NCBI RefSeq assembly: GCF_039654945.1
Contig: NW_027361684.1
Span: 8,122,001-8,186,000, forward strand
Direction: 5' to 3'
Origin: Dendrobates tinctorius
Lineage: Eukaryota
Length of the DNA: 64,000 bases
Made by a program: the position numbers and the translations under genes. A model generated the notes under the pieces. It searched no databases. It was not told the DNA's origin and saw only the letters and a list, made by a program, of their open reading frames with translations. Below, piece after piece: positions 4,099-57,684 of the stretch. The stretch's first letter is position 1; each line of letters begins with the position of its first letter.

Positions 4099-5514
4099 TA
4101 TTTGGTCAGAAACAAAATTTCATCTCAATACTTTGTGATATATCCTTTGTTGGCAATGACAGAGGTCAAACGTTTTCTGTAAGTCTTCACAAGGTTGCCA
4201 CACACTGTTGTTGGTATGTAGGCCCATTCCTCCATGCAGATCTCCTCTAGAGCAGTGATGTTTTTGGCTTTTCGCTTGGCAACACGGACTTTCAACTCCC
4301 TCCAAAGGTTTTCTATAGGGATGAGATCTGGAGACTGGCTAGGCCACTCCAGGACCTTGAAATGCTTCTTACGAAGCCACTCCTTCGTTGCCCTGGCGGT
4401 GTGCTTTGGATCATTGTCATGTTGAAAGACCCAGCCACGTTTCATCTTCAATGCCCTTGCTGATGGAAGGAGGTTTGCACTCAAAATCTCACGATACATG
4501 GCCCCATTCATTCTTTCATGTACCCGGATCAGTCGTCCTGGCCCCTTTGCAGAGAAACAGCCCCAAAGCATGATGTTTCCACCACCATGCTTTACAGTAG
4601 GTATGGTGTTTGATGGATGCAACTCAGTATTCTTTTTCCTCCAAACGCGACAAGTTGTGTTTCTACCAAACAGTTCCAGTTTGGTTTCATCAGACCATAG
4701 GACATTCTCCCAAAACTCCTCTGGATCATCCAAATGCTCTCTAGCAAACTTCAGACGGGCCCGGACATGTACAGGCTTAAGCAGTGGGACACGTCTGGCA
4801 CTGCAGGATCTGAGTCCATGGTGGCGTAGTGTATTACTTATGGTAGGCCTTGTTACATTGGTCCCAGCTCTCTGCAGTTCATTCACTAGGTCCCCCCGCG
4901 TGGTTCTGGGATTTTTGCTCACCGTTCTTGTGATCATTCTGACCCCACGGGGTGGGATTTTGCGTGGAGCACCAGATCGAGGGAGATTATCAGTGGTCTT
5001 GTATGTCTTCCATTTTCTAATTATTGCTCCCACAGTTGATTTCTTCACTCCAAGCTGGTTGGCTATTGCAGATTCAGTCTTCCCAGCCTGGTGCAGGGCT
5101 ACAATTTTGTTTCTGGTGTCCTTTGACAGCTCTTTGGTCTTCACCTTAGTGGAGTTTGGAGTCAGACTGTTTGAGGGTGTGCACAGGTGTCTTTTTATAC
5201 TGATAACAAGTTTAAACAGGTGCCATTACTACAGGTAATGAGTGGAGGAAAGAGGAGACTCTTAAAGAAGAAGTTACAGGTCTGTGAGAGCCAGAAATCT
5301 TGATTGCTTGTTTCTGACCAAATACTTATTTTCCACCATAATATGCAAATAAAATGAAAAAAAAAACAGACAATGTGATTTTCTGGATTTTTTTTTTCTC
5401 AGTTTGTCTCCCATAGTTGAGGTCTACCTATGGTGTAAATTACAGATGCCTCATCTTTTTAAGTGGTGGAACTTGCACTATTGCTGACTGACTAAATACT
5501 TTTTTTCCCCACTG
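4095..5514 (-). mobile_element. Young Tc1 (DD34E, IR/DR type) transposon, one TIR mostly deleted
   Basis: Intact ~207-bp TIR at 5308-5514 ending CCCCACTG+TA. Only 21 bp of the other TIR remain (4095-4115, exact reverse complement of 5308-5328). Confidence 0.95.
4125..5147 (-). pseudogene. Tc1 transposase, uninterrupted 340-codon frame but start codon reads AAG
   Basis: Paired-like HTH N-terminus with GAPRK; [22 protein letters not shown] with D-E spacing of 34. Positions 5147-5145 read AAG, followed by GTG AAG ACC AAA GAG. Confidence 0.9.
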
Positions 5515-6964
5515 TATGCTACTACAATGCTCTGAACAAGGGGTAAGTGACATAGCGAATCAGAAGAACTATACTACATCTCTAATTGGAGGTATTTGCA
5601 AATATTATTCTAAATCCACCCACTACATATTGTTATGGGATCTTGGAGATGGCAGTACACCTTTAATGTTGGAACCCACAGGCAATTTTTACCAGTGTAT
5701 ACCTACACAGTCACATTCTTTATTAGTATCAGGGAAATTCTCATGATGTAAACCTCCAATGTACACTGCAATTGTTTTTTTTTTTCTGCAAAAAACGGCA
5801 TTGATTCCAGCACTTCTACTGTGAGATTATGAGCACCACCGGGGGCTAGGACTGAGACGTGTGAACGTGCTCTGTGCACAGATCATCGGAGATTTCACTG
5901 GTTTATAGGTGGCTGATCATGAATAAGGCTTTGTTTCCGTAGGTGTAATGCAGGTTACATTTCCATTCAGTTTTTATTTCCTTCAGAAAGAGGAATAAAT
6001 CTCAGCAGAGGCAAAAAGGAAAACATTCCCGAAAGAAAAGGCTTGTGAACCCCTCACTTATTACCTCTGCGGAGATCTGTTTCCATTAAAATAGAATGAA
6101 AATGGTCCCCTTTTACACACAAGACTGGCACGGATATTGAGGAGGGGGCACTGCACTGTTACTGAGGCTTGATTGGTAGAATCATGCAATAAAAATAAAA
6201 TCCTGCACAATTTGGTTAAAGACTAAAGCACAAAACTATGTAATCAAAAAAATCAAATCCACATTTAAGAAAAAAAAAAAAAATCCAGCAAAAGAAATGC
6301 CCGTAAAACATCTGCTTTCAATTTCAGACCCCTGTCCCACATGGGTCAAAATCAGAAATGGCAGCGAAAGAGGCCAGCAAGACTTTGGCAGGAACCAGTC
6401 ACAGGCACAAATCTCCAGAAAGTATGCAACATAAAAACACGCCGACTCTTGGGATCTCTGAAGAACATAACGCCCAACAGCCCAGCACCAAACAAAAATC
6501 AGATATTAGGAAATGTACAGGCAAATAGTTAAGAAAAAGGAAAAGATGCCTTCACGTGATCATTGTACTGATTATAACTCCTCCAAGAAAAATAAATTAA
6601 AGAAAAATATAACATTGCTTTAAATATCAAGTCAGGTATTTTAGTTATTAAAAAAAAATAAAAAATCAGCATTATAAATTTCTACAGGTGAAAGAAGCCA
6701 TGATTTTCTAATCTAGGACAACCCCTTTGACGTGGACATTGTAACAACATTCTTTTGTCAAGATCAGTATTTATACTATATTTTATAAGTGTACAGTCAG
6801 GAGTCTGAACGGTCATCGCTTACATTATAATTGTGTGACCGGAGCTGTGCAGTCATCATTATCTGTGACAGCAGATACTGGTTTCCCCTGTAGAAAACTT
6901 CAGTGGTTGAGCATGCAGTTTTACCACACAGTAGGTTCTAGTGACTGAGATATTGACTCTTCAG

Positions 6965-7247
6965 CAGCGGTGTACAACCTGTGGCCAGAAGGCTACATGT
7001 GGCCCGCAATGCCATTCCATGAGGAGCCATCTGACTCCACTGTATTCAGTAGGTTTCAAACTATAGTGATGGTGGTGCTCATTGTGCGGTCATCTTCAAG
7101 TGCTAAATATTGGTGCAGAGGATTTTTTTTTTTTTTTTATAGTACTGTTGATATATAACTCTGATCAGAATATCGTTTTAAATTTTATGTGGACCTTGGG
7201 AGTGGTACATAATTTTGCACTTGGCCAAAAAAATGTGTGCACCTCTG
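6965..7247. mobile_element. hAT-type MITE
   Basis: Termini CAGCGGTGTACA / TGTGCACCTCTG; perfect 8-bp TSD CTCTTCAG at 6957-6964 and 7248-7255. Confidence 0.85.
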
Positions 7248-8203
7248 CTCTTCAGAAATCATAAAGCCGTATAATTCCCAGACAATCCCTGCATGTGTTG
7301 TGGCAGTCGAACAGCCCCGAAACATACAGCCGCAGGGACTCAAACATATTTTTCGAGCACGCTGAAGACACCGTTTGCACATGAGCATGCTCAGATAACA
7401 CCTAACCTGAGCACGTTCGCTCATCACTAATGGTACCATATAAGTGAGTGAGTAAAATCTATAAAAGAAAATTGCTTTAGTGCTGCTTGCAAATTCTGTT
7501 GTGTCAATCCTTCTGATTTATTCAATAAAACTTGTACGAGATCAATCATGGCCTTCACAGACCATGTAACGTGATAATGTAGGTAGACCCTAAAAGATGC
7601 AGGAAAAAAACTTGACTGAAGAACTGATTAGCAGATATTATTTCATCACCCTCTCCAACAGATTGGGAAACCTCAAAGTCTGCACAAACCGGGCAAGAAT
7701 TGCATTTATTTGTTCAGTGTCATACACACACATGCTGCTCTTTCTCCAAGTAGTAAGAGGCTGGAGTGTGGAGGCTGTTTTGTTAAACACATTAAGATGA
7801 TAGAGGAGAAAAGCAAGAAAACAGGGATGGTATGCATCTCGCCCCATAAACCCTGCAAAGCATTAACATTCCAGCGTAGCCACCGGAAAGGCAAAATAAT
7901 GTGATAAAGAGAAATGCCAAAAAGAGAGGGAAATGCACTCACTACTTGAGGTCTCCAGGCCTCCATACACATCAGATAAAATTCGTCTGAACCCAGCCAT
8001 GTAACGTGTATAGGAGCCTCCCAACTCTGCCATGACAGATTATATCGGGGACATAAGGATCGGGTGGATCCCCTAGTTCTCCATGAGGTAAACCAATGTC
8101 AGATGATTGTGGCAGTGGCTTTCTCATAGAGAATCACAGGAGCGCTTGGCCTAGCAGTGTTTCTTTACATGGAGGAGTCGGCGAAGATAGCTGTCAGCCG
8201 AAT

Positions 8204-11200
8204 CAGGGCTGTGGAGTCCAGCCAAACCTACGACTCAGACTCCCCAATTTCCCTTACCCTGACTCCACAGCCCTACCTCACTACTGAGCATAAATTGCAG
8301 CACAGATTTATCTCATCTATGACTCCACAGCACTGGTCACTACTGAGCATGTGCATAAAGGGCAGCACAGATTCATCTCAGCTACATCTCCACAGCACTG
8401 GTCACCACTGAGCATGTGCATAAAGTGCAGCACAGATTCATCTCATCTATGACTCCACAGCACTGGTCACTACTGAGCATGTGCATAAAGTGCAGCACAG
8501 ATTCATCTCATCTACATCTCCACAGCACTGGTCACTACTGAGCATGTGCATAAAGTGCAGCACAGATTCATCTCATCTATGAATCCACAGCACTGGTCAC
8601 TACTGAGCATGTGCATAAAGTGCAGCACAGATTCATCTCATCTACATCTCCACAGCACTGGTCACTACTGAGCATGTGCATAAAGTGCAGCACAGATTCA
8701 TCTCATCTATGAATCCACAGCACTGGTCACTACTGAGCATGTGCATAAAGTGCAGCACAGATTCATCTCATCTACATCTCCACAGCACTGGTCACTACTG
8801 AGCATGTACATAAAGTGCAGCACAGATTCATCTCATCTACATCTCCTCAGCACTGGTCACTACTGAGCATGTACATAAAGTGCAGCACAGATTCATCTCA
8901 TCCACATCTCCTCAGCACTGGTCACTACTGAGCATGTACATAAAGTGCAGCACAGATTCATCTCATCCACATCTCCTCAGCACTGGTCACTACTGAGCAT
9001 GTACATAAAAGTGCAGCACAGATTCATCTCATCTACATCTCCACAGCACTGGTCACTACTGAGCATGTACATAAAGTGCAGCACAGATTCATCTCATCTA
9101 CATCTCCTCAGCACTGGTCACTACTGAGCATGTACATAAAAGTGCAGCACAGATTCATCTCATCCACATCTCCTCAGCACTGGTCACTACTGAGCATGTA
9201 CATAAAAGTGCAGCACAGATTCATCTCATCCACATCTCCTCAGCACTGGTCACTACTGAGCATGTACATAAAGTGCAGCACAGATTCATCTCATCTACGA
9301 CCCCACAGCACTGGTCACTTATTGAGCATGTACATAAAGTGCAGCACAGATTCATCTCATCTACGACCCCACAGCACTGGTCACTACTGAGCATGTATAT
9401 AAAGGGCAGCACAGATTCATCTCATCTATGATCCCACAGCACTGGTCACTACTGAGCATGTACATGAAGTGCAGCACAGATTCATCTCATCTACATCTCC
9501 ACAGCACTGGTCACTACTGAGCATGTGCATAAAGTGCAGCACAGATTCATCTCATCTACATCTCCCCAGCACTGGTCACTACTGAGCATGTACATAAAAG
9601 TGCAGCACAGATTTATCTCATCTATGAATCCACAGCACTGGTCACTACTGAGCATGTGCATAAAGTGCAGCACAGATTCATCTCATCTACATCTCCACAG
9701 CACTGGTCACTACTGAGCATGTGCATAAAGTGCAGCACAGATTCATCTCATCTACATCTCCTCAGCACTGGTCACTACTGAGCATGTGCATAAAGTGCAG
9801 CACAGATTCATCTCATCTATGAATCCACAGCACTGGTCACTACTGAGCATGTGCATAAAGTGCAGCACAGATTCATCTCATCTACATCTCCACAGCACTG
9901 GTCACTACTGAGCATGTACATAAAGTGCAGCACAGATTCATCTCATCTACATCTCCTCAGCACTGGTCACTACTGAGCATGTACATAAAGTGCAGCACAG
10001 ATTCATCTCATCCACATCTCCTCAGCACTGGTCACTACTGAGCATGTGCATAAAAGTGCAGCACAGATTCATCTCATCCACATCTCCTCAGCACTGGTCA
10101 CTACTGAGCATGTACATGAAGTGCAGCACAGATTCATCTCATCTACATCTCCACAGCACTGGTCACTACTGAGCATGTGCATAAAGTGCAGCACAGATTC
10201 ATCTCATCTACATCTCCCCAGCACTGGTCACTACTGAGCATGTACATAAAAGTGCAGCACAGATTTATCTCATCTATGAATCCACAGCACTGGTCACTAC
10301 TGAGCATGTGCATAAAGTGCAGCACAGATTCATCTCATCTACATCTCCACAGCACTGGTCACTACTGAGCATGTGCATAAAGTGCAGCACAGATTTATCT
10401 CATCTATGAATCCACAGCACTGGTCACTACTGAGCATGTGCATAAAGTGCAGCACAGATTCATCTCATCTACATCTCCTCAGCACTGGTCACTACTGAGC
10501 ATGTGCATAAAGTGCAGCACAGATTCATCTCATCTATGAATCCACAGCACTGGTCACTACTGAGCATGTGCATAAAGTGCAGCACAGATTCATCTCATCT
10601 ACATCTCCACAGCACTGGTCACTACTGAGCATGTACATAAAGTGCAGCACAGATTCATCTCATCTACATCTCCTCAGCACTGGTCACTACTGAGCATGTA
10701 CATAAAGTGCAGCACAGATTCATCTCATCCACATCTCCTCAGCACTGGTCACTACTGAGCATGTACATAAAGTGCAGCACAGATTCATCTCATCCACATC
10801 TCCTCAGCACTGGTCACTACTGAGCATGTACATAAAAGTGCAGCACAGATTCATCTCATCCACATCTCCTCAGCACTGGTCACTACTGAGCATGTACATA
10901 AAGTGCAGCACAGATTCATCTCATCCACATCTCCTCAGCACTGGTCACTACTGAGCATGTACATAAAAGTGCAGCACAGATTCATCTCATCCACATCTCC
11001 TCAGCACTGGTCACTACTGAGCATGTACATAAAGTGCAGCACAGATTCATCTCATCTACGACCCCACAGCACTGGTCACTACTGAGCATGTGCATAAAGT
11101 GCAGCACAGATTCATCTCATCTACATCTCCCCAGCACTGGTCACTACTGAGCATGTACATAAAGTGCAGCACAGATTCATCTCATCTATGATCCCACAGC

Positions 11201-13771
11201 ACTGGTCACTACTGAGCATGTACATGAAGTGCAGCACAGATTCATCTCATCTACATCTCCACAGCACTGGTCACTACTGAGCATGTGCATAAAGTGCAGC
11301 ACAGATTCATCTCATCTACATCTCCCCAGCACTGGTCACTACTGAGCATGTACATAAAGTGCAGCACAGATTCATCTCAGCTACATCTCCACAGCACTGG
11401 TCACTACTGAGCATGTACATAAAGTGCAGCACAGATTCATCTCATCTACATCTCCCCAGCACTGGTCACTACTGAGCATGTACATAAAGTGTAGCACAGA
11501 TTCATCTCATCTATGACCCCACAGCACTGGTCACTACTGAGCATGTACATAAAGTGCAGCATAGATTCATCTCATCTACATCTCCACAGCACTGGTCACT
11601 ACTGAGCATGTACATAAAGTGCAGCACGGATTCATCTCATCTATGACTCCCCAGCACTGGTCACTACTGAGCATGTACATAAAGTGCAGCACGGATTCAT
11701 CTCATCTACGACCCCACAGCACTGGTCACTTATTGAGCATGTACATAAAGTGCAGCACAGATTCATCTCATCTACGACCCCACAGCACTGGTCACTACTG
11801 AGCATGTATATAAAGGGCAGCACAGATTCATCTCATCTATGATCCCACAGCACTGGTCACTACTGAGCATGTACATGAAGTGCAGCACAGATTCATCTCA
11901 TCCACATCTCCACAGCACTGGTCACTACTGAGCATGTGCATAAAGTGCAGCACAGATTCATCTCATCTACATCTCCCCAGCACTGGTCACTACTGAGCAT
12001 GTACATAAAGTGCAGCACAGATTCATCTCAGCTACATCTCCACAGCACTGGTCACTACTGAGCATGTACATAAAGTGCAGCACAGATTCATCTCATCTAC
12101 ATCTCCCCAGCACTGGTCACTACTGAGCATGTACATAAAGTGTAGCACAGATTCATCTCATCTATGACCCCACAGCACTGGTCACTACTGAGCATGTACA
12201 TAAAGTGCAGCACAGATTCATCTCATCTATGACCCCACAGCACAGGTCACTACAGAGCTTGTACATAAAGTGCAGCATAGATTCATCTCATCTACATCTC
12301 CCCAGCACTGGTCACTACTGAGCATGTACATAAAGTGCAGCACAGATTCATCTCATCTACGACCCCACAGCACTGGTCACTTATTGAGCATGTACATAAA
12401 GTGCAGCACAGATTCATCTCATCTACGACCCCACAGCACTGGTCACTACTGAGCATGTATATAAAGGGCAGCACAGATTCATCTCATCTATGATCCCACA
12501 GCACTGGTCACTACTGAGCATGTACATGAAGTGCAGCACAGATTCATCTCATCTACATCTCCCCAGCACTGGTCACTACTGAGCATGTGCATAAAGTGCA
12601 GCACAGATTCATCTCATCTACATCTCCCCAGCACTGGTCACTACTGAGCATGTACATAAAGTGCAGCACAGATTCATCTCAGCTACATCTCCACAGCACT
12701 GGTCACTACTGAGCATGTACATAAAGTGCAGCACAGATTCATCTCATCTACATCTCCCCAGCACTGGTCACTACTGAGCATGTACATAAAGTGCAGCACA
12801 GATTCATCTCATCTATGACCCCACAGCACTGGTCACTACTGAGCATGTATATAAAGGGCAGCACAGATTCATCTCATCTATGATCCCACAGCACTGGTCA
12901 CTACTGAGCATGTACATGAAGTGCAGCACAGATTCATCTCATCTACATCTCCCCAGCACTGGTCACTACTGAGCATGTGCATAAAGTGCAGCACAGATTC
13001 ATCTCATCTACATCTCCCCAGCACTGGTCACTACTGAGCATGTACATAAAGTGCAGCACAGATTCATCTCAGCTACATCTCCACAGCACTGGTCACTACT
13101 GAGCATGTACATAAAGTGCAGCACAGATTCATCTCATCTACATCTCCCCAGCACTGGTCACTACTGAGCATGTGCATAAAGTGTAGCACAGATTCATCTC
13201 ATCTATGACCCCACAGCACTGGTCACTACTGAGCATGTACATAAAGTGCAGCATAGATTCATCTCATCTACATCTCCACAGCACTGGTCACTACTGAGCA
13301 TGTACATAAAGTGCAGCACAGATTCATCTCATATACGACCCCACAGCACTGGTCACTACTGAGCATGTACATAAAGTGCAGCACAGATTCATCTCATCTA
13401 TGACCCCACAGCACTGGTCACTACAGAGCTTGTACATAAAGTGCAGCATAGATTCATCTCATCTACATCTCCCCAGCACTGGTCACTACTGAGCATGTAC
13501 ATAAAGTGCAGCACGGATTCATCTCATCTATGACCCCACAGCACTGGTCACTACTGAGCATGTGCATAAAGTGCAGCACAGATTCATCTCAACTGAACAC
13601 CGAGATCCTTAGATCAGGAACAGAACAGACATATATAGGACATTTCATAACTTTCCCAAATTATTATGAAAGAATATTCGTCAGCACATCCTGCATTGTA
13701 CTAATGGAGCCAACATATTATATATTTTATGTGTCAGAGATGGTCCATTTTATACCGACTCCACAGCCCTG
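8204..13771. mobile_element. Non-autonomous hAT-type element carrying the 65-bp satellite
   Basis: Perfect 15-bp TIRs CAGGGCTGTGGAGTC (8204-8218) and GACTCCACAGCCCTG (13757-13771); perfect 8-bp TSD AGCCGAAT (8196-8203, 13772-13779). Confidence 0.9.
8261..13591. repeat. Tandem satellite, 65-bp monomer, about 82 copies
   Basis: Monomer CACAGCACTGGTCACTACTGAGCATGT(G/A)CATAAAGTGCAGCACAGATTCATCTCATCTACATCTC; occasional 66-bp units; variation concentrated in one ~10-nt segment. Confidence 0.98.
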
Positions 13772-15819
13772 AGCCGAATGATAGCTCAATTGACAGCTAT
13801 CTAGTGTTTATGGTCAGCTTTATAGTCTCAGTATTTATAAGCCAGAGAAGGAAAGCAGAATAATTCAAAAATGTGCACCTATTCTGTGATTTGAAGCTAC
13901 TTCTTTTTTTCTTGCAAATACTGATGAAATACTGACCAAAAATACTGGTACACAATACGGCCATGTACAAGACACCTGAAAAAGCAGCTCCAATTGCAGC
14001 GGACCAAGGAAGTTGTGGAACCAGTTAGGAGTCAGTCTGGTTTCCACATTAATAATCCTGAACACCCACGTCTTATACAGCACACAACACTCATCAGATT
14101 AATTTCACCATGCGTCTCCATGTGAAGTCTGAAGAAGCTCACAAACCACCCATGTAGCTCCACTCCAAGCACATCCCGGGCCCCCCCATACATTACTGCG
14201 ACAGTCCCCTCGGTACTATTGGAAGACTGGCAGTGTAAGCACTTAGTCTAAACATGACTTTATAGGAGGGGGGAAGAGGTCAGGACCCCAATCTGCTAGC
14301 ATAACAGCAAGGAGCGGGGCAGAGATGACAGTTGTGTCAGTGAGTTAGACAGCGTGTTGTCCCATCTATGAGTCCAGGGTCTGTTCTAGCCGCACGTACA
14401 TCGCATACCGGGACACATGGTGAAAGGTCTGCTCATTAGTAGGGTCCTTGTATACACTAACAGACCACCAGTGATGGTCAAGAGAGGTTGTAATATCGGA
14501 AACCTAATAACACAAAAATGGTCAAAAACAAGCAAAAAATGTTGAGATCGCTCTGACAATGATTATATCTTGTGTCACCTTGAAGAAAATGTGCGCGCCT
14601 CTTAAATATCATTTCCAGGAATGTGAATGCCGACCCAATGACACGGGCAGAACGTGACATCGGGACAGTTTATAATAATGGGATCCCATGAATAATAAAA
14701 TAGCTGTATAATGTTAAGAACTAAGAATATAGTAAGGGGAGAAGTATAGTATAAATCACTTATTGTCATACTTAAAATATTCTTAGAATATTCAAGTATT
14801 GAGCACAAGATCCACAATGCTCACACGTAAACGCTACTACCTCACTTTTAGGGTGAATTCACACACAGAAGGTTTGGGTGCAGTAATAAAATGTCTTCAA
14901 ATAAACGGCAAAGGTCACATTTTGCCGCTTTTCAAGGGCAATGTGAGGCCTCATGAATGGATTGATGCATAACGTGTGCAGAGCCTATAAATCCCTCCGA
15001 TATTATACAGGACTTATACTTCACTATCAAATACTGACAAGCAGCACACGTCAGGCGATGTTTACACATGGCGAATAAGTTGTGTATTTTTAGTCTGAGT
15101 TTGTGGGTGAAGATTTTACCAACACCATCCACATACTGAAAAAAAAATATCTGTGGCGACAATCGACCTGCAGTGCAGTTATCAAATCTGCTGCAGATTT
15201 TTCACAGTGGATTTTACTCTATATATATTTTGAAATCTAGGGAAATAGCAAAATCAAAGACGCCAACATGCTTTGCAAATTTTGTCACTGATTTGTTTTG
15301 GATTCATAGAAAAGGCAAACATTCACTAAATAAATGTATAGGTAATGATGTGTGTTGCTGGGAACGCTCCCCATATATGATGGAAGAGATGTACAAATCA
15401 TCTTCTGATCATTGTATTAATGTAGAAAATTCTCTAATCTAATCTCAACCTCCTAAAACTCAGGAAGAACCGCAAACTTATGACCTTTGATGAGACCAAA
15501 AGGGCGAAACCCTGGATCGGGCAGGCCGCTGAGCGTATGGTATCGTTTTCAAAAATGGATTACCGTATACTGATGTGCTGACGCTCCTCTGTGAGGAAGC
15601 GAATTGCATTGTGGAATTAAAAAAAAAAAAAAGTGTGAATAGTTTTATACTTTGTTTCGGCTACTGTGTTTTATAGAGAATCCCACCATCTATCTGGAGA
15701 ACATCCTGAGCATTAGGAAGGTGGTTCTTCTAGTGGAAGCTGCTCAATTAGAAGAACCACCTGGTCGGAGTATTGGTATGAAAGCGCGTGAGTTTTTTAT
15801 GACACCATTCAGACTGTGA

Positions 15820-16125
15820 GGCCATGTGCACACGCTGCGGAATCACCCGCGGGTTTTTTCCCGCGGAAACGCAGGTAAAACCGGAGGCAAAGTGACCTGC
15901 AGTTTTGCTGCGGTTTGGCCTGCGGTTTCACACCTCTACTATGTTAAAGGTGTGAAACCGCAGCGGAATCCACAAAAACAATTGACGTGCTGCGGAAAAA
16001 AACGCAGCGTGAGCACTGCGGTTTTGAAAACCCATAGGGTTACATGGTACTGTACCATGTCTGCGGAACTGCTGCGGTTCCGCAGGGCCAAAACCGCAGC
16101 GGAACCGCAGCGTGTGCACATAGCC
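15820..16125. mobile_element. Fold-back MITE, TGA TSD (Harbinger-like)
   Basis: TIR GGCCATGTGCACACGCTGCGG / CCGCAGCGTGTGCACATAGCC; TGA on both sides. Confidence 0.85.
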
Positions 16126-17371
16126 TGATAGTCTTGATCGGCCATAATTTTGACTATTCCAGAGTTCTTTATGGACTTTCTCCTCCATCATAAGACCAGG
16201 TCCATTAAACATGGGTAACATATCGACTTTATATGTGTAGTAATTTTACTAAACATTTTATTTCTGCTTCTGTAACAATATTTGCAGCTTTTTTTTTATT
16301 ATTGTGCTATGATTACTTTATAATCTAATTGTGTAACAGCCGTAAACTCCTATGACCGGAAAGCTGATATATGGGGAGTTTAGTTCTCTATTTTACCCAC
16401 GCAAAGCGGAGATAGCAACGTGGCAACTGGTGATTTTTCCCACAGTGACTCTGCGCAGTATAGAAGAAAGAAAAAATTCTTTGACTCCTTGGCGCTTACA
16501 GACGCTAAAGATTAATATTCCGGATGATTTCTGGAGGCACAGGGATAGCCATGTTTGATTAACAGTTTCCTGGCATAGTCGGTGTCGAGCACATGTTGGA
16601 TCATTAAATACTAAGTATGTAACAAGAAGTGTCCAGACCTCTGGTGTAATGATACAGCTTGTACTTTTCTCCGATCAGGGACAGTAACAATGTCCAAGAG
16701 GCTCATAAAAAATAATACTTAAGCAGCAGAGCTTCTGGATGTGCCACCTCCTGCGAAACACTGCGCACGTGGCCAACTCCACAAGTAATGAGATGAGGCC
16801 GAGATACCACAGGGAGGATCATTAATCATCCGGTGCCAGGCACAGCTGTGGCCCCAGACAGCCCACTTGTCTCCTGCCTACTGGACAAGACAGGACGGGG
16901 ATGATGAATATTTACAAGGTGTGTCCAGCTGAGGACGATTACACCGAGCCTGGAGAGAAGGCATCCATGGGAGAAAAACCTACTAAAGCGATGACATCGG
17001 CACCAGGGTGCTGTAACACAACAGCTCACATCTCTACCATTGTGAAAAATGGCGCACAACCACAGCATCAATGCCCACACGATCGGTGCTCGGCTGGCAC
17101 ACAGAATGAATTTGGCTGTCATGTATCGGGCTTTTCTCTTTTTTGTTTTATTTACTTTTTGTGCCTTTGGCTAGAACTCGCTCATGAGAATATACAATTG
17201 TGACTGTTTTTTTCCCCATTGTTGTGATACTATTTTAATATTTACTGTTTTTCCCTAAAAATCACGTCAAATTCTCTGCAATATACTTTTGCCTAAAATC
17301 AAGCTGTAGTTATCGCATGCAATGAGAGCAGAGATCCTAGTCTTCAGAGAGTTTATATTGTGACTCTTATT

Positions 17372-17754
17372 TTGTGTGCACACGATGCAGATTTGCAGCG
17401 GATCCGCAGCGCATTTTACCGCGCAGAAACGTTGCATATCCGCATTGTGAGGATGTACAGTAGCCTTAAAATCAATGGGAAAAAAAACCGCTGTGCAGAC
17501 GCTGCGGATTTTTCCGCGCGGTTTTCCTGCGGTACAAAATCCGCAGCATGTTACTTGTTTTGTGCGGTTTTCCACCTCCCGTCTCCAAATCCGTAGGGGG
17601 GAGTCCGCAGTGGAAAACCGCACAAAAAAACGCAAGGAAACCGCAGGAAAAATGGAAGAAATCTGCAGGAAAAATGCAGGTCATTTGACCTGCGGATTTC
17701 TTCCATTCTGCAAAGAAAAATCCGCAGGGCTAAAAACTCCGTCTGCACTCAGCC
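17372..17754. mobile_element. TGCGG/CCGCA-rich MITE
   Basis: Right terminus GTCTGCACTCAGCC+TAA; internal palindromic TGCGG/CCGCA motifs; left terminus decayed. Confidence 0.65.
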
Positions 17755-19801
17755 TAAATTTATAAAAGTCCATCAGTGTTTGCACCAGGTATGTATAAAT
17801 CAAAGACTGTGCAATTAGTGCATTATTCTGGCTGCACCACTTCCTACAAATATCAAATTAAAGGGATTCGCTAAGAATTCAGCCTTTATTTCGTTGCGTG
17901 GGGTCCACTGGACCCCAATTTTATTTTTGTCATATTTCCGCAAGAATGGAAGGTAGGCAACCGTCCGTTTGGGTAGCTCCCTAGCTCGGGCCCCTGCCTC
18001 ATCAGTGCATCACGTCAACTACACGTGCCATAGCGAGGTGTGCAACTAATATAGAGTAAGTATTTTGGGGCGACTACCTGAAGGTTAAGTGCTGATAGAC
18101 TCTAGATCCATGAGAGTCAAAAGCACAATCAGCCCTTTACTGCGAGTGAGGGTCCTGAAGGTAGGGTAACAACTAATCTAATATCGGAGGGGTTTTCCAG
18201 GTTCATAAAGACCCTATTCCATTTTTTTTTTTTAATTAATTTTGACCATTTTTCAATGTCACTGTATACTAAATAATATCTTGGCTCAATGGAAATAAAT
18301 TATTATACATTCATAAAAGTTATCTGTGAGTGACTGCATCTGGTCCGGGTGAGAGTCAGGACTGCACAAGAATGCAAAATATACGAGGTGTTTACCTAAC
18401 GAACACGCTTTATTCTGGGAATGAAAACCAGCTGTCACCTCTTACAGAACGCGGACCTGCACAGATTCCCCATGTTTAAGTTTTGTATCAAGTTTTAGTC
18501 TTCGGTCACAAGTGGTCACCACTGCCTGTGACCAGAGTGAAATTTTCACATATAGAATACTACATTATTGATGATAATGTGTGCAAACTGTGAAGCGCTG
18601 CAGAATATGTTAGCGCTATATAAAAATAAAGATTATTATACATTGTAAGGCCGCATTCACACATCCACATGCAAGGCCATCTGGCAATTCTGGCAAATGC
18701 CAGAAGGGCCTGTCTGGTCGGGGGCCATCTTGTTTGCTACATTGTTAACAGAATCGGTGTTCTCAAGACAACTCATACTGTTAACAGTTGTGACGGAGCA
18801 CAAAGTCACAGACTCCGTCACTTACCCCAGCAGGCCACGGGTATCATTAGGAATATTGGTCTTGTTGTAAATCTTCCTTTTCCTCCATCTAAGGTAATAT
18901 TAGGAATATATCTCCACCTGGTTCTTGGGGATGAGGACATCATGGGCCTGTGTGATTTCAAATGCCAGGGCTGGATTTCAGCCCCAGTCCGTACCTGTTC
19001 ACATGTCATGATCTGTGATACAAGGTCCAGCCGCGGGAGCGCCGACACAAACCAGGTGGCCTCATAGGTCAGTCCGTGCACCGCCATCCAAACTCAGACT
19101 ATGTCACATGGATGTGCAAATCTGGCTGAAGGCCAGCGCTCTACCACAACTGCTGCAGGTTTCCGCCACCCCAATGTTTCCATGCAGGCGGAGGCAGTCA
19201 CAAGAATGGCGTGATGCTTTTCTCCTTGCATATGAGGAAAATGGACCTATTGACCTTAATGGGTGATACTGATCCACAAATCAGATAAACCCGTAGCCAG
19301 TCGGGAAATCACAGACTGTACATGGACATGTGAGTGCAGCCATACAGCCGCAAGATATTTGGCCCTGAAAGTCATATGCGGATGGCCTGTGGTTATATTC
19401 ACACACAGAATTTTTGTTGCATTTTTTTTCTTGGAAAAAAAACCCCCACCCAAGTAATGCAGTTTTGTTTTTAGTTTTTTTTTACTTGCACAATAGTTAA
19501 AAAAAAAAAAATAAATAAAAAAAAAATACAAGGAAAAAAATGTTTCAATGAGATGTAATAGTTCTCAGTTTTGCTGCTGGAAAATACTGCATTCTTTTGC
19601 TACCAAAGGAAAAAAAAATTGATGGAAAAATGCCAAGTGTGAACAAATCCTTAGGGTGAGGATATACATTAGTGTTTCATGCTATAATTTTGTAGGTTGA
19701 ACTAGTCATTTTTACTCCCCAAAATTATCTAGTTCTCAAATGTATATCAAACATATTTGCAAAGTTATTCCACGTGGACGTAGCTAAAGTTCATTGTGGT
19801 A

Positions 19802-25891: not shown

Positions 25892-28800
25892 ACATTGTGG
25901 CCTTGCATCTGACCAGAGATACTGTTTGGTGCGTGCAGAAACCTTGGGTACAATGGTCTGTCCATGCATTTCACACTAGTTATTCGAGAGGGGTTTCACT
26001 GCTGGTACATAGAGATGTTAGATGGGAAGCCAGGGAGACCCGGAGGGATTCTGAAGGTAGCTTTGTTTTTGTACATGCATTGATAAAAAGCAGGAAATAT
26101 GTAATCCTATGTGTGTTTATAACCCCCCCCCCCCCCCCCCCGGCTAATACGTTCATTCTTCAAAAAGCAATGAGCTTTGCCCTAAATTATCCAGACGCGG
26201 ACGTTATCTGTATGGGAGACTTCAATATGGTCATGAATACTTACCTTGACAAATTGAGATTAGAGGGAGGCACGTCTGGGGGAGTCTCTTCGCTGAATGT
26301 GACCCAACTGTCACTATTTATGGAGGGTGGTGGGTGGCTAGATTTATGGAGGATGTGTCACCCTGAATCAAGGGAGTATACCTGCCACTCATGCACTAAG
26401 CGATCTCTATCGCGCATAGACTACATATTCGGATCCAGCGGCCTGGCGATGTGGGTAGACGGTATAGAACATGGCAGTAGGGGGATTTCAGACCATAGTC
26501 CAGTCATTCTTAAACTTAAATATGGACAACCAAATAATAGGATGTTCTGGAAGTTGAATCCTTTTTGGTTAAAGCTGATGGTGACTCCAGATAGAACGAT
26601 CGATCAGTTGCATTGCTTCATCTCGTCCCACCCAGAACCTCAAGATATCAATTTATTTTGGGATGCCCTTAAGGCATATCTGAGGGGTTGCTTATCCTCC
26701 ACGATTTCTTATATTAAAAGGGTAACCTCAAGGGAGGATGATGAGATGGAGCAGTGATTGAAAGATTCAGAGGCTACATATATATCTAACCAAACTAGCG
26801 GTAACAGGACTGAGTGGTTGGCTGCTCAGAGGTTATATGCTCAGCATAAGGACACTAAGTCCAAGCGTAAACTATTCTTTAACAACTCAAATACAATACT
26901 ACAGATTCGTAAGCCGGATGATTCATTGGTATCGTCAACCGAAGAAATACTTGGCTGTTTTTATGATTATTACAGATTATATGAATCTAAAAGTGACTGT
27001 GACAGCTTGGGGTGTTTAGATTATTTGTCAGATGTGACATTCCCTACATTAGACCCTGAACAGCGGGCCCTTATGGACGCTGAATTTACTGCGGAGGACA
27101 TAGAAAATGCCATAACGGACATGGCCTCCGGGAAGGCTCCTGGGCCGGACGGATTTCCTATTGAATTGTACAGGAAATATCGGGATATATTAACGCCACT
27201 GTTGGTTAAAGTATTTCGGGGAATTTGGGAAGGGAATTCTATGCCTGAATCCTTTTACGAAGCCAATATCATAGTACTTAAGAAGGAGGGGAAGCACCCT
27301 TTGGAATGTGGATCCTACCGCCCTATCTCGTTAGTAAATGTGGACTATAACATTTTCACTAAGATTCTAGCTACCAGACTGAATTCGATTATATTGAGCC
27401 TTATACATTCTGATCAAACAGGCTTTATGCCTGCTAAGAGCACTTCCATTATCAGACGGGTCCAGTCAATAGCCCAATATAGCTCGCTAAGGGTACCGTT
27501 ACACCTAGCGACTCACCAGCGATCCCGACCAGCGATATGACGCGGTCAGGATCGCTGGTGCATCGCTAGGTGGTCGCTAGTGAGCTGCCACACAGGCAGA
27601 TCTCACTAGCGACATCGCTGGGGACGGGGATCGCTACTTACCTGTCAGACGCGGCGATCCTGCGTCCTCCCGCCCGGCTCCACGCGTCGCTTGTCGTCAC
27701 AGCAGGAAGCGCCGCAGGAAGTGACCGACGAGAAATGATCCAGCAGCTTCTCGCGCGATCAGCGATAACCAGCGGGGGAGCCGGTCGGAGGTATCACATG
27801 CAGCGATATCGCTAGCAATATCGCTGCAACGTCACAAAATCGGTGACTTTACAGCGATATTGCTAGCGATATCTCAGTGTGTAACGGGGGCTTAATGCCA
27901 GATAACAAGTGGGCACTGGCATCGCTAGACGCTGCCAAAGCTTTTGACTCTCTTGAGTGGCCTTTCCTTTCCACGTGCTTATAAAGATATGGCTTTGGTG
28001 ATAAATTTATAAAATGGATCAAAGCACTATATATGAAGCCCAAGGCCCGTATCATAGTGAATGGCTCTGTGTCTGAGTCTTTTCCATTACATAGGGGGAC
28101 TCGTCAAGGGTGTCCCCTCTCCCCGGCCCTATTTGCGGCAATATGCATTAGGTCTTCCCCTGGCATTAGAGGTATAAATATAGTGGGTCGGGTAGATATC
28201 ATTGGTCTATATGCTGACGATATGGTGATATTCATGGATGAAGCGGAGGAGACTCTACCACAAGTAATTGCCATTATAGATTCAGTAAATACTCAGGTCT
28301 ATATATAAATTGGGAGAAGTCCGCTCTGTTACCCCTTTCCCATGCCCCAATGCCCCAGCTAGAAGCTCTCTCTTCGCTGTCTATTGTATCTAGTTTTAAA
28401 TATTTGGGTATACACATATCTCGAATTAATACGCTTGACTCACAACTCAATATTCACCCACTGCTGGAACTAGTTAAAGTGAAATTTACAACTTGGAGCA
28501 CACTCCCACTGTCTGTGGCCGGATGTATTAACCTGATTAAAATGATATTACTCCCCAAGCTCAGCTACTCCCTTCAGCATAGTGCCGTAGTGGTACCCAA
28601 ATCCTTCTTTGTAAGTCTCAATTCCCAGATCACATATTTCATCTGGGGGAAAACTAGGCCTAAACTTAAATTGATCACCCTGCAGAGATCAAAAAAGGGA
28701 GGTGGGGCGGCGTTACCAGATTTTTTCTTATACTATTTGGCTGGGCAAGCTAAAGCTTTAAATAAATGGATGCCGGGTAGTTGCCTCCCCAATTCGGAAA

Positions 28801-35642: not shown

Positions 35643-36936
35643 CGAGGGGCGATCCAAAAGTAATGATAATCAATAATAAACACAATGAATATAGTAAAAA
35701 AAAAAAAATCTATTTTTCTACTTAGTCTCCTAACAAGTCTATACATTTAGTCCATCTCTTTTCTAAACTTAGAATTCCCTTCGAAAAAAATTCTTGATCT
35801 TGACCCTCAAAAAACTCCCCAACAGCGGTTATCACATCGCTATTGTCGTCAAATTTCTTGCCCCGGAGGTGTTCCTTGAGCCGAGGAAAGAGAAAGAAGT
35901 CACTGGGGGCTAGATCTGGCGAATAGGGGGGGTGTTCCACCAGTTCAAAGCCCGCTTCTTGAATGGTAGCCATAGCAACTGCAGCTTTGTGAGCCGGTCG
36001 TTATCTTGGTGAAACAGCACTCCAGCCCCCAGTTTGCCGCGCCTTTTCTCCTTGATAGCCTCCCGCAATCTTCTTATTTGTTCTGCATAGTAGGAGCCCA
36101 TAATAGTGGCTCCCTTCTCCAAATAGTCCACCATAATAATTCCTTCAGCGTCCCAAAAAACAGACACCATAACCTTCCCTGCTGAGCTTGACACTTTGAA
36201 TTTCATCGGCGTTGGTTCGTCGGCTCGTTTCCATGTCATCGATTGTTGTTTAGTTTCGGGATCAAAGTGGTGGATCCAGGTCTCATCCATGGTCAAAAAA
36301 CGTGACAAAAAATTCTCCTTGTCTGCTTGGAACTTTTCGAGATTTGCTATTGAAATGTCAACTCATTTCTTCTTTTGCTCGTCGGTTAACATTTTTGGCA
36401 CCCAACGCGTGGAGACCTTTCTCATATGCAATTCTTTTGCAAGAATTCTTTGAATACTGCCATATGAGATCCCTGTGACCTCAGCTACATGCCTGATAGT
36501 CACTCTTCGATCTGCCAACACAACTTCAACTTTTTTCACGTTTTCTTCATTGAGGGACGTGGATGGGTGTCCTTCGCGATGTTCATCTTCCGTCGATGTT
36601 CTTCCCAGCTTAAATTCCTTGGCCCAGCGTGCAACTGTGGAATATGGAGGAGAAGAGTCCCCCAATGTTTCCACCAAGTCGCTGTGTACGTCTTTGGTAG
36701 ACAGTTTTTTCAAGCAGAGGTATTTTATGCCAGCTCTGAGCTCGTTTTTTTTCCATTTTGATGTTCACGCCTTGGCAGTTCATATTCAAATGAATGTAGC
36801 TCCCGGGAATCGTGGCCTATTTCAGTGAGTTTTTTTTCATGGACTAGTGGGTAACTAAAAGAGAAGAAAACATTTTATTTTTATTTCTGTGTGCAATAGA
36901 AATAACCGATTATCATTACTTTTGGATCGCCCCTCG
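35643..36936 (-). mobile_element. Full-length mariner (DD34D, irritans/Himar1-like) with few lesions
   Basis: Perfect 29-bp TIRs CGAGGGGCGATCCAAAAGTAATGATAATC with TA TSD; ATG at 36756; motifs WVPKML, TMDETW, HQDN, YSPDLAPSDFFLF, GD*VEK. Confidence 0.95.
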
Positions 36937-38672: not shown

Positions 38673-40286
38673 GGGCCCCGTCACACATAGCGACTCAACA
38701 GCGATCCAGACAATGATATCAACTTGTCAGGATCGCTGGTGAGTCGCTACATGATCGCTGGTGAGCTGTCAAACAGACAGCTTCAACAGCGATCAGCACC
38801 AGCGACGCAGAGTGCGCGGCGTCGCTGTGTACTTTAGTTACCACCTCGCTGATGCAGGGAGCTGGTAACTAAGGTACACAGAGGGTTCCTAAGGGGCGTG
38901 TGTCACATAGAAACCCGATGTGTACCTTGATCGGACCCAAAGAGTGGTCGTAAATGGCTGCACATCCAGTTGGAAGAATGTCTCAAGTGGGGTACCACAG
39001 GGCTCTGTCCTGGGCCCTGTATTGTTCAACATCTTTATCAACGATTTAGATGAAGGAATTGAGGGTAAACTGATTAAATTTGCTGATGACACAAAGCTAG
39101 GAGGGATAGCTAATACTAGAGAAGAGAGAGAGAGGATTCAAAAAGATTTAAATAAACTGGAGAAGTGGGCAGCAACTAACAGAATGGTTTTTAACAGGGA
39201 GAAATGCAAAGTACTACATCTGGGCAATAAAAATGAAAAAAGCATATACAGAATGGGAGGAATAGGGCTAAGTGACAGCACATGTGAAAAAGACTTGGGT
39301 ATACTAATAGATCACAGACTGAATATGAGTCAACAGTGTGATGCAGCAGCAAAAAAGGCAAATGCAATTCTAGGATGTATTAACAGAAGCATACAGTCTA
39401 GATCACGTGAAGTGATTATTTCCCTCTACTCCTCTTTGGTCAGACCTCATCTGGAATATTGTGTCCAGTTTTGGGCACCACATTTTAAAAAAGACATCAA
39501 CAAACTGGAGCAAGTTCAGAAAAGAGCGACCAGAATGGTGACCGGTCTGCAAACCCTGTCTTATGAGGAAAGGTTGCAGGATTTGGGAATGTTTAGTTTG
39601 CAAAAGAGAAGACTGAGAGGAGACTTAATAGCTGTCTACAAATATCTAAAGGGCTGTCACATTGTAGAAGGATCATCTTTATTCTCATTTGCACAAGGAA
39701 AGACTAGAAGCAATGGGATGAAACTGAATGGGAGGAGACAGATTAGATATTAGAAAAAACTTTTTGACAGTTAGAGTGATCAATGAGTGGAACAGGCTGC
39801 CACGAGAAGTGGTGAGTTCTCCTTCAATGGAAGTCTTCAAACAGAGGCTGGACAGACATCTGACTGGGATGATTTAGCGAATCCTGCTTTGAGCAGGGGG
39901 TTGGACCAGATGGCCCAGGAGGTCCCTTCCAACTCTATGATTCTATGATTACCAGCTCCCTGCATCAGCGCGCTGGTAACTAAGGTACACATCGGGTTTC
40001 TAAGCACCACCTGGTGCTTAGAAACCCTGTGTTTTTTACCTTAGTTACCAGCACGCTGATCGCTGGTCTCCCGCCTGTCACACGCAGCGATGCATGCTGG
40101 TCAGCGGGAGTCCAGCGATCAAAAAATGTCCTGGCTATTCCAGGACGATCAGCGATAACCGGCAGGGGGCCAGTCGCTGGTCAGTGTCACACACAGCGAT
40201 CTCGCTGGTGAGATCGCTGTTGCGTCACAAAACTTGTGACTCAGCAGCGATCTCGCTAGCAAGATTACTATGTGTGACGGGGGGCT
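38673..40286. mobile_element. AGCGAT-rich MITE (TTA TSD) inserted in the RTE and interrupted by CR1
   Basis: TTA-GGGCCCCGTCACAC ... GTGTGACGGGGGGCT-TTA; RTE sequence resumes on both sides. Confidence 0.88.
38929..39948 (+). mobile_element. Young 5'-truncated CR1 LINE (ORF2 RT C-terminal part and 3' UTR)
   Basis: GVPQGSVLGPVLFNIFINDL, KFADDTKL, RPHLEYCVQFW; 3' tail (TTCTATGA)n; one frameshift near 39740. Confidence 0.95.
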
Positions 40287-47999: not shown

Positions 48000-48546
48000 C
48001 TAAAATGAAAGGAAATGAACAATTCAGGGTATGTCCACATGTACAAGTTTTGAGTTGCAATAATTCTGCGGCACATCTGTGATAAAACAATCATGTGCTC
48101 CATTCAGATTTGATGCATATTTGTCGCACATTGCAAAGTGTGAAATCTGCACGACAAACGAATATTAAAAAAAAAAAAAAAAAAGCATTGCAGGTTAATT
48201 TCAGAAACAGATTTGAAAAAAACTATATAAAAAAAGCTACTAAATTGCCGTTATGAAAAATCTGCAATACATCTGGTTCACCTTGGTCTAGAAAGCGCAC
48301 TCTGCATTTGAAGGGGTATTCCCACCTTGTATATAATGGGATATTGGTGGGACGTTCAGCTGTCTTGGAACTAAGCCTGACCGTTCCACTGGCACATAAA
48401 GCTCCCATTGTTGGGACCAATGTCTATATGTTCATGACACACCCTGTGGAGAGACCATAAAAATATAACATGGGCATAGCCCTTTAAGACGTAGTTGGGC
48501 TTTGCAGTTAACGTTCATGCTATTACAGTAGCGTGACTGCAAAATC

Positions 48547-57615: not shown

Positions 57616-57684
57616 CAGGGCTGAGGAGTCGAAGTCTTGGAAATTCAGGCGTCGGAGGTTTGGCTTACCGACTCCACAGCCCTG
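57616..57684. mobile_element. 69-bp minimal copy of the CAGGGCTGTGGAGTC hAT family
   Basis: CAGGGCTGAGGAGTCG...CGACTCCACAGCCCTG; flanks CTTCGCCT / CTTAGCCC (6/8 TSD match). Confidence 0.75.

What the first reader, a model, noticed from the sequence alone, without database searches (positions are those of the whole stretch)
8196..13779. A 5.3-kb satellite array is cargo of a hAT-type transposon
Seen: the ~82 x 65-bp array is enclosed by perfect 15-bp TIRs (CAGGGCTGTGGAGTC) and a perfect 8-bp TSD (AGCCGAAT), and only about 240 bp of the 5568-bp element is non-array. The element interrupts a hairpin of an older MITE (GATAGCTGTC-AGCCGAAT-GATAGCTCAATT-GACAGCTATC). Known: 8-bp TSDs with short CAG-starting TIRs indicate hAT, and MITE-borne tandem repeats are described in Xenopus (Xstir/Xmix, a different TTAA family). 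Inference: this is a mobile satellite-seeding unit that delivered or grew an array inside an ABR intron.
Basis: partly seen in the sequence, partly recalled or inferred. Interest (0 to 1): 0.75.

Follow-up and report, generated by a model that had tools for sequence, protein, structure and literature searches.

The report
Frog hAT-like transposon carrying satellite array
A 5.6-kb jumping gene with no transposase of its own, almost entirely filled with 82 copies of a 65-base repeat that is abundant in this frog and its relatives, sits here with perfect ends and a perfect insertion footprint; it is a clean example of the already known way in which small transposons carry satellite DNA.

Summary
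A perfect 15-bp inverted repeat (8204-8218 / 13757-13771) and a perfect 8-bp duplication, AGCCGAAT, frame 5,568 bp that hold about 82 units of 65 bp.

What I add:
- The left 72 bp is a complete mini-MITE. A solo 69-bp relative lies at 57616-57684.
- The array starts exactly at that mini-MITE's inner end, and every unit begins with a decaying copy of that end.
- In public contigs of four related organisms the repeat is laid by thousands of contigs each. The "unique" right arm (13592-~13690) is just as repeated and joins back onto monomers in other copies.
- The flank from 13804 on is single copy.

So this locus received a tract of an old, widespread satellite; it did not seed one.

hAT assignment rests only on structural hallmarks: the 8-bp duplication and CAGGG (YARNG) termini. 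No transposase lies in the element or the window. The "older MITE" at the target is not supported: there is only a 12-bp-stem palindrome. The ABR-intron claim was not tested.

This scan has already reported several hAT-framed satellites on other DNA of the same genome. Verdict: a real feature and a new member of a known kind.

The parts
8196..8203 (.). left copy of the 8-bp target site duplication AGCCGAAT
   Evidence: one of only two copies in the window, directly abutting the left TIR
8204..8218 (+). left terminal inverted repeat CAGGGCTGTGGAGTC (terminus CAGGG fits YARNG)
   Evidence: perfect complement of 13757-13771
8204..8275 (+). 72-bp mini-MITE module: left TIR, 42-bp core, and an inner right-end copy (GACTCCACAGCCCTA, 14/15)
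   Evidence: 14-nt perfect inverted repeat inside; 72% identical to the solo MITE at 57616-57684 (minus orientation), sharing GCCAAACCT.CGAC and AATTTCC in the core
8261..13591 (+). satellite array of about 82 units of 65 bp. Unit 1 starts with the inner TIR copy. Each unit starts with a TIR-like 15-mer in right-end orientation (25 units with up to 2 mismatches).
   Evidence: 37 distinct unit sequences; multi-unit block duplications (753 bp with 5 mismatches at a 28-unit offset; 354 bp exact at 11 units)
13592..13654 (+). spacer segment at the array's right edge. It is not unique: it is as repeated as the monomer and is followed by monomers again in other genomic copies.
   Evidence: bins 13576-13689 are highly covered in all four runs; joints 13652 -> 13336/13401/13531 with 1-5 letters between; contigs bridge 13591/13592 at ~88-91% identity in all four runs (table 8)
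13655..13756 (+). right subterminal region, with much lower coverage than the array; no detectable homology to the monomer
   Evidence: coverage drops from 13690; alignment to the monomer no better than shuffles, p 0.3-0.6; no other copy in the window
13757..13771 (-). right terminal inverted repeat (GACTCCACAGCCCTG on the + strand)
13772..13779 (.). right copy of the target site duplication AGCCGAAT
8185..8196 (.). left arm (AGATAGCTGTCA) of a 12-bp-stem palindrome in the target; the element sits in its loop
   Evidence: the right arm is 13791-13802
13791..13802 (.). right arm (TGACAGCTATCT) of the target palindrome
57616..57684 (-). solo 69-bp MITE of the same family (TIRs 14/15 and 15/15), flanked by CTTCGCCT / CTTAGCCC (6/8 identical, an old TSD)

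Best explanation
This is one copy of a non-autonomous, hAT-like cut-and-paste transposon family whose interior is a tract of an old, abundant 65-bp satellite.

Shown:
- The 5,568-bp unit has perfect 15-bp TIRs and a perfect 8-bp TSD, so it (or a shorter forerunner) was inserted here by a transposase.
- The array begins exactly at an inner copy of the right end, and every unit starts with a decaying copy of it.
- The same monomer, and the same junction between monomer and right arm, occur many times in four related genomes.

Inferred:
- Long before this insertion, a unit made of the right-end TIR plus the ~50 bp next to it was amplified in tandem inside a ~70-bp MITE-like element.
- The family then spread, each copy moved by a hAT transposase supplied in trans that recognises the outer TIRs.
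- This copy arrived already holding a mixed array, which has since been remodelled by unequal exchange of blocks of 2-28 units.
For: - Frame.
- hAT hallmarks (8-bp TSD, YARNG terminus): PMC3014272.
- The left 72 bp is a whole mini-MITE with a solo relative in the window.
- Unit 1 is the inner TIR copy plus 45 bp. There is a gradient of TIR likeness across the array, GACTCC then GAATCC then GACCCC/ATCTCC.
- Family-wide spread: 5,217 to 18,202 contigs are laid on 1.1 kb in four runs, against one contig each on the flank 13918-14400. Contigs bridge 13591/13592 in all four runs. At variable monomer sites (13449, 13473) the letters not called 'other' also carry many times the single-copy depth, so the local unit subtypes probably also occur elsewhere and were probably not made here.
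- Block duplications at 98-100% identity.
- The element has no protein-coding capacity apart from an in-array ORF, and no hAT transposase is found among the 20 window ORFs scanned (ten of 148-369 aa, ten of 115-136 aa).
Against: - No second framed copy with array, TIRs and TSD could be read, because no genome search was available.
- No contig shown crosses 13771/13772, so neither other insertion sites of the right end nor an empty allele were seen.
- The TSD AGCCGAAT does not fit the usual hAT target consensus (NTNNNNAN): position 2 is G.
- No autonomous partner is known.
- With 0 differences in only 23 paired bases (TIR plus TSD), the age of the insertion is poorly bounded. In-situ growth therefore cannot be excluded by dating.
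- In many other copies the spacer 13592-13652 is followed by more monomers rather than by the right end. Many arrays may therefore lack this frame.
Confidence: 0.6

Rival explanations
1. In-situ growth. A short element (left arm, one or a few monomers, right arm; a few hundred bp) inserted here, and the 5.3-kb array grew afterwards at this locus by slippage and unequal exchange.
For: Large internal block duplications at 99-100% identity (354 bp exact, 753 bp with 5 mismatches) show recent local amplification. Perfect TIRs and TSD do not date the event tightly.
Against: The array holds 37 distinct unit sequences and at least five subtypes. Those in 13272-13591 probably also occur in many other copies in four organisms. 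Mutation at one locus would not recreate shared subtypes. The overall 93% match is low for a young local expansion beside an unmutated frame.
Confidence: 0.2
2. Composite (macro)transposition. A complete 72-bp mini-MITE and an independent right end lying some kb apart were used together by the transposase, moving the host DNA between them, including a resident satellite tract.
For: The left 72 bp is a complete two-ended MITE. The right arm is a mosaic: 13607-~13690 also occurs joined to an unrelated sequence in other copies (loose ends at 13607). The right arm is not homologous to the monomer.
Against: The array starts exactly at the mini-MITE's inner TIR, and all units carry a TIR-like head in the same orientation. 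The satellite therefore derives from the element end and is not unrelated host DNA. The junction between monomer and right arm recurs in four genomes, as expected of a family structure and not of a one-off capture.
Confidence: 0.12
3. Chance resemblance or assembly artefact. The frame is fortuitous, or the array is a mis-assembly.
For: No raw long reads could be laid.
Against: A 15/15 TIR directly abutted by an 8/8 direct repeat is far beyond chance. The array carries ordered unit variants and is short enough for single long reads. The flank contig of run X1 matches with 0 differences.
Confidence: 0.03

Closest known systems
Xstir satellite riding on the Xmix MITE of Xenopus laevis (Hikosaka & Kawahara 2004, as listed in review PMC9659126)
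   Same: A frog MITE whose TIR region gave rise to a tandem repeat that occurs framed by the MITE ends. The satellite is spread by a non-autonomous DNA transposon.
   Different: A different transposon family. The sequences are unrelated as far as known, and the genome is a dendrobatid according to earlier scan notes.
miDNA4, a Tc1/mariner MITE of Xenopus tropicalis with an internal satellite motif (Scalvenzi & Pollet 2014, via PMC9659126)
   Same: A MITE with a satellite motif inside, amplified into tandem arrays (PMC9659126). The model is birth of a monomer inside a MITE followed by amplification.
   Different: Tc1/mariner, not hAT-like. In the element here each monomer carries a copy of the element's own end, and the array is 82 units long.
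Tetris foldback transposon and TIR-220 satellite of Drosophila virilis (PMC4079207)
   Same: Non-autonomous. The tandem repeats derive from the TIR region. The same repeats also form kb-size satellite-like arrays. It shares its termini with a small MITE (DAIBAM), as the 72-bp module and solo MITE do here.
   Different: Foldback architecture, with repeats inside long TIRs on both sides. Here there are short 15-bp TIRs and one central, one-orientation array. Insect, not frog.
DTC84 / pearl-type tandem-repeat-containing MITEs of bivalves (PMC3879986)
   Same: Flanking arms act as a cassette for an internal array of ordered repeat variants of variable number.
   Different: Up to five core repeats, a putative AA target duplication and a microsatellite tail. 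No hAT hallmarks.
Tandem accumulations of hAT-derived MITEs at inversion breakpoints in Atlantic cod (PMC12368964)
   Same: A vertebrate hAT-family MITE arranged in tandem.
   Different: There, whole MITEs lie in tandem at breakpoints. Here, a sub-element unit (one end plus 50 bp) is repeated inside a single framed element.

Membership tests
hAT superfamily (non-autonomous member) | 8-bp target site duplication | tested here: met
   AGCCGAAT x2 abutting the termini. The solo MITE has 6/8. Listed as a hallmark in PMC3014272.
hAT superfamily (non-autonomous member) | Short TIRs with terminal motif YARNG | tested here: met
   A 15-bp perfect TIR starting CAGGG. The motif is as given in PMC3014272.
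hAT superfamily (non-autonomous member) | hAT transposase (BED finger, DDE domain with hAT dimerisation domain) encoded, or an autonomous partner with the same TIRs | tested here: not met
   No coding capacity in the element. Twenty window ORFs were scanned (ten of 148-369 aa, ten of 115-136 aa). They give Tc1, mariner and LINE domains only. A partner elsewhere in the genome could not be searched for.
hAT superfamily (non-autonomous member) | Target consensus NTNNNNAN (weak preference; from my own knowledge, and from TSD patterns in table 1 of PMC3014272) | tested here: inconclusive
   AGCCGAAT has A at position 7 but G at position 2. This is one site only.
MITE | Small (tens to a few hundred bp), non-coding, with TIRs and a TSD, multi-copy | tested here: inconclusive
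   The 72-bp module and the 69-bp solo copy fit. The 5,568-bp element as a whole is far above MITE size because of its array. Copy number is only indicated by contig coverage of the right end.
Tandem-repeat-containing MITE / transposon-borne satellite (Xstir, miDNA4, Tetris, DTC84 kind) | Central array of repeats framed by the transposon's arms, with the same repeat present at many loci | tested here: met
   Array inside the TIR/TSD frame. Thousands of contigs of the monomer, and the recurrent junction between monomer and right arm, are seen in four runs.
Tandem-repeat-containing MITE / transposon-borne satellite | Several framed copies with variable repeat number at different insertion sites | not testable with these tools
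   No search of the eukaryotic genome was available. Contigs break in the repeat. The metagenome scan found nothing.
Satellite DNA | Long head-to-tail arrays of one unit, abundant in the genome, with higher-order structure | tested here: met
   81.4 x 65 bp. Block structure. Very high contig number and summed word depth in four organisms (the depth is only a rough guide).

The most novel reading that the evidence does not exclude
Each monomer's TIR-like head is a usable alternative right end. The transposase could then pair the single left TIR with any of the ~25 well-kept inner copies and move nested sub-elements of any length, from the 72-bp mini-MITE (of which the solo copy at 57616-57684 would be a product) up to the full 5.6 kb. 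This would be a built-in mechanism that both spawns MITEs and scatters satellite tracts of graded length, and it could explain why several hAT-framed satellites with TIR-bearing units occur in this genome.
Probability: 0.12. Interest if true: 0.6.

Novelty: new member of a known kind. Interest (0 to 1): 0.3.

Why it matters
This copy gives an unusually legible picture of how a satellite hangs on a transposon. It shows the progenitor mini-MITE, the exact point where amplification began (its inner end), the decaying end copies in each unit, and an intact insertion footprint.

Taken with the other hAT-framed arrays this scan has noted in the same genome, it suggests that hAT-like elements are a regular vehicle for satellite DNA in poison-frog genomes. 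The published genome paper for the dyeing poison frog does not mention satellites (PMC11152451). As a single locus, however, it does not change what is known.

Tried and rejected
As the tool advised, I laid the right junction region only. The left junction and the array were therefore never laid.
2. All 22 runs were Logan contigs, not raw reads. Array length, junction support by long reads and an empty allele could not be tested. No listed contig crosses 13771/13772.
3. Homology between the right arm (13592-13756) and the monomer was rejected: local alignment scores are no better than shuffles (p 0.32 and 0.62).
4. "Older MITE" at the target: there is no second copy of the flank or of the palindrome arms in the window, and the adjacent flank is single copy. 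In the window, 1.4% of positions lie in comparable hairpin loops.
5. Constraint on the TIR-like head of the monomers was rejected. Five of the eight variable columns of the unit lie inside it, and 51 of 81 units have the ATCT form with 3 or more mismatches.
6. Exact-pattern scan of metagenome contigs with the monomer core: 0 hits.
7. Rfam and tRNA scans of 7500-14500: nothing.
8. Literature search for the TIR string: nothing.
9. Earlier-findings look-ups by sequence and by relatives: blank.
10. A BLAST self-comparison of the array failed technically and was replaced by my own ungapped scan.
11. The ABR-intron context was not tested: exons are too short to find with the ORF and Pfam route within safe call sizes.
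12. The 32-bp minisatellite at 48546-49268 was checked for a TIR frame; none was found.
Full report
**Observation**

AGCCGAAT stands at 8196-8203 and 13772-13779 and nowhere else in the window. Directly inside these lie CAGGGCTGTGGAGTC (8204-8218) and its perfect reverse complement (13757-13771). The inverted repeat stops at 15 bp. Shuffled sequence gives 0.08 matches to this 15-mer at up to two mismatches, against 29 observed. An exact 8-mer at two fixed positions has a chance of 1 in 65,536. Tandem Repeats Finder reports one array, 8289-13591, with period 65, 81.4 copies and 93% matches. The frame is real, and the element is 5,568 bp long.

**Anatomy: the left module**

The first is that the left 72 bp (8204-8275) is itself a complete two-ended mini-element:
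- the left TIR;
- a 42-bp core;
- an inner copy of the right end, GACTCCACAGCCCTA, 14 of 15.

A solo element of 69 bp with the same TIRs lies at 57616-57684. Its core is related (GCCAAACCT.CGAC, AATTTCC; 72% identity overall). It is flanked by CTTCGCCT / CTTAGCCC, 6 of 8 identical, which looks like an old TSD. The mini-module inside the big element has no TSD of its own, because 8276-8283 is CCTCACTA. It is therefore part of the element and not a later insertion.

**Anatomy: the array**

The second point is that the array begins exactly at that inner end. Unit 1 (8261-8320) is the inner TIR copy plus 45 bp. Every later unit begins with a TIR-like 15-mer in the same right-end orientation. Likeness to the TIR falls along the array:
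- GACTCC (1 mismatch) in units 2 and 4;
- GAATCC in the left third;
- GACCCC and GATCCC in the right half;
- ATCTCC (3 or more mismatches) in 51 of 81 units.

In all, 25 units match the TIR with at most two mismatches. Five of the eight variable columns of the unit lie inside this 15-mer. Nothing therefore suggests that the end-like head is being kept functional.

The array is not a simple ladder. It has 37 distinct unit sequences. It also contains duplicated multi-unit blocks: 753 bp with 5 mismatches at an offset of 28 units, 1,033 bp with 18 mismatches at 10 units, and 354 bp without mismatch at 11 units. This is the signature of unequal exchange.

**Anatomy: the right arm**

The third point is that the 180-bp right arm shows no detectable homology to the monomer apart from the TIR.

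**Evidence from other genomes**

Only assembled contigs of public runs were on offer, and the organisms were coded. I therefore laid 13272-14400, which covers five units, the right arm, the junction and the flank, on one run each of four organisms.

The flank 13918-14400 is covered by a single contig in each run. It has 0 differences in X1, 10 in X18, 24 in X15 and 27 in X5 over about 485 bp. These are therefore the same species or individual plus three relatives at roughly 2%, 5% and 5.6% divergence.

In contrast, 5,217 to 18,202 contigs per run are laid on the 1.1-kb stretch, almost all on 13272-13690. More than a thousand per run are 99% or more alike. Summed word depth over the units is about 10^5 times that of the flank in all four runs. 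The tool warns that this is not a copy number, so I use it only to say "very abundant".

Contigs cross the 13591/13592 junction at about 88-91% identity in all four runs (table 8). Many contigs go from 13652 back into the start of a unit (13336, 13401, 13531) with one to five letters between. In other copies this spacer therefore lies between units. One group of contigs joins 13607 onward to an unrelated sequence, so the right arm is a mosaic.

Coverage falls about a hundredfold from 13690, partly because other copies diverge there (loose ends at 13671 and 13679 read like diverged continuations). It stays well above single copy across the TIR. It drops to single copy at 13804-13841 in three of the four runs; in X15 it is about twice the single-copy figure.

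At variable unit sites (13449, 13473) the contigs not counted as carrying the 'other' letter also have many times the single-copy depth. The unit subtypes found here therefore probably also exist elsewhere.

No listed contig crosses 13771/13772. I could see neither other insertion sites of this right end nor an empty allele.

**What it is and how it most likely works**

The frame shows a transposase-made insertion. The 8-bp duplication together with a short TIR starting CAGGG matches the structural hallmarks given for hAT families, 8-bp TSDs and YARNG termini (PMC3014272). The element encodes nothing. The 20 window ORFs scanned (ten of 148-369 aa, ten of 115-136 aa) carry only Tc1, mariner and LINE domains. 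The transposase must therefore come from elsewhere. This is inferred, and no partner was found.

The position of the array start and the end-like head of every unit show that the satellite arose by tandem amplification of "right end plus about 50 bp" next to a ~70-bp MITE-like element.

The abundance of the unit, its presence in relatives up to about 5.6% diverged, the recurrence of the junction between unit and right arm, and the probable sharing of subtypes all say that this happened long before the present insertion. They also say that the copy most likely arrived already holding a mixed array. The near-identical internal blocks say that the array has also been reshaped locally. I put this reading at 0.6.

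**Rivals**

- Growth entirely in place from a short insert: 0.2. It is disfavoured by the probably shared subtypes and the 93% unit identity next to an unmutated frame, but dating cannot exclude it, because only 23 paired bases are available.
- A composite move of a mini-MITE, a host satellite and an independent right end: 0.12. The mosaic right arm favours it. The array's derivation from the element end, and the recurrent junction, argue against it.
- Chance or mis-assembly: 0.03.

**The other claims**

The target hairpin exists and has a 12-bp stem (8185-8196, 13791-13802) with an 18-nt loop once the element is removed. However, 1.4% of all positions in the window lie in comparable loops. 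No other copy of the flank or of the arms is in the window, and the neighbouring flank is single copy. "Older MITE" is therefore unsupported.

The ABR-intron statement was not tested.

The name of the organism, dyeing poison frog, comes from earlier notes of this scan. I did not verify it, and the runs' organisms were coded.

**Comparison with what is known**

Transposon-borne satellites are established, also in frogs. The Xmix MITE gave the Xstir satellite from its TIR region, and the Tc1/mariner MITE miDNA4 holds an internal satellite motif that is amplified into tandem arrays (review PMC9659126). Tetris of Drosophila virilis has TIR-derived tandem repeats that also form kb-size arrays, and it shares its termini with a small MITE (PMC4079207). 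DTC84 of a clam has arms that act as a cassette for ordered repeat variants (PMC3879986). hAT-derived MITEs stand in tandem at cod inversion breakpoints (PMC12368964).

The present element works like these. It differs in three ways: the hAT-like frame, a unit that consists of one transposon end plus adjacent sequence, and an array of 82 units that makes up 96% of the element.

The genome paper for the dyeing poison frog reports hAT elements as 3.91% of the assembly but does not contain the word satellite (PMC11152451).

This scan has already noted several hAT-framed satellites on other DNA of this genome (s1-376861, s1-369615, s1-377030, s1-377005, s1-386068, s1-382824). I could not read those loci and cannot say whether any is the same family.

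**Verdict**

This is a real, well-preserved, non-autonomous hAT-like element carrying a tract of an old and widespread satellite. It is a new member of a known kind, not a seeding event and not a new mechanism.

The most novel reading still open is that the end-like heads of the units serve as alternative right ends, so that nested sub-elements of graded length, down to the 72-bp MITE, can be mobilised. The decay of those heads argues against it, and I give it 0.12.

Noticed in passing
window 57616-57684: A solo 69-bp MITE of the same TIR family (TIRs 14/15 and 15/15), flanked by CTTCGCCT / CTTAGCCC (6/8). It is an older insertion than the big element.
   Followed up: yes
window 4125-5144 (-): A 339-aa open reading frame of a Tc1/Sleeping-Beauty-type transposase (HTH_Tnp_Tc3_2, HTH_SB, DDE_3), possibly full length.
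   Followed up: partly
window 35910-36713 (-): A mariner-type transposase remnant split over two ORFs (Transposase_1 partial DDE; HTH_48/HTH_32).
   Followed up: partly
window 25897-27540 (+) and 38920-39753 (+): LINE fragments: endonuclease (Exo_endo_phos) followed by reverse transcriptase (RVT_1), and a second RVT_1 piece.
   Followed up: partly
window 48546-49268: A 32-bp minisatellite, about 22 copies at 83% matches, containing the palindromic core TGGGCCCA. No TIR/TSD frame was found around it.
   Followed up: partly
window 13880-13955: A short stretch in the right flank is covered at hundreds to thousands of times the single-copy level in all four runs, so it is another dispersed repeat. 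The flank contigs of all four runs end at 13916-13918.
   Followed up: no
window 8185-8196 and 13791-13802: The element sits in the 18-nt loop of a perfect 12-bp-stem palindrome. The background rate of such loop positions in the window is 1.4%. This is a single case, so no target preference can be claimed.
   Followed up: yes
window 13607-13690: In other genomic copies this part of the right arm is preceded by an unrelated sequence ending ...GTGTGTGAATGTAG (loose ends in X1 and X18). It may therefore be a fragment of yet another repeat family.
   Followed up: no
I did not examine it.
   Followed up: no
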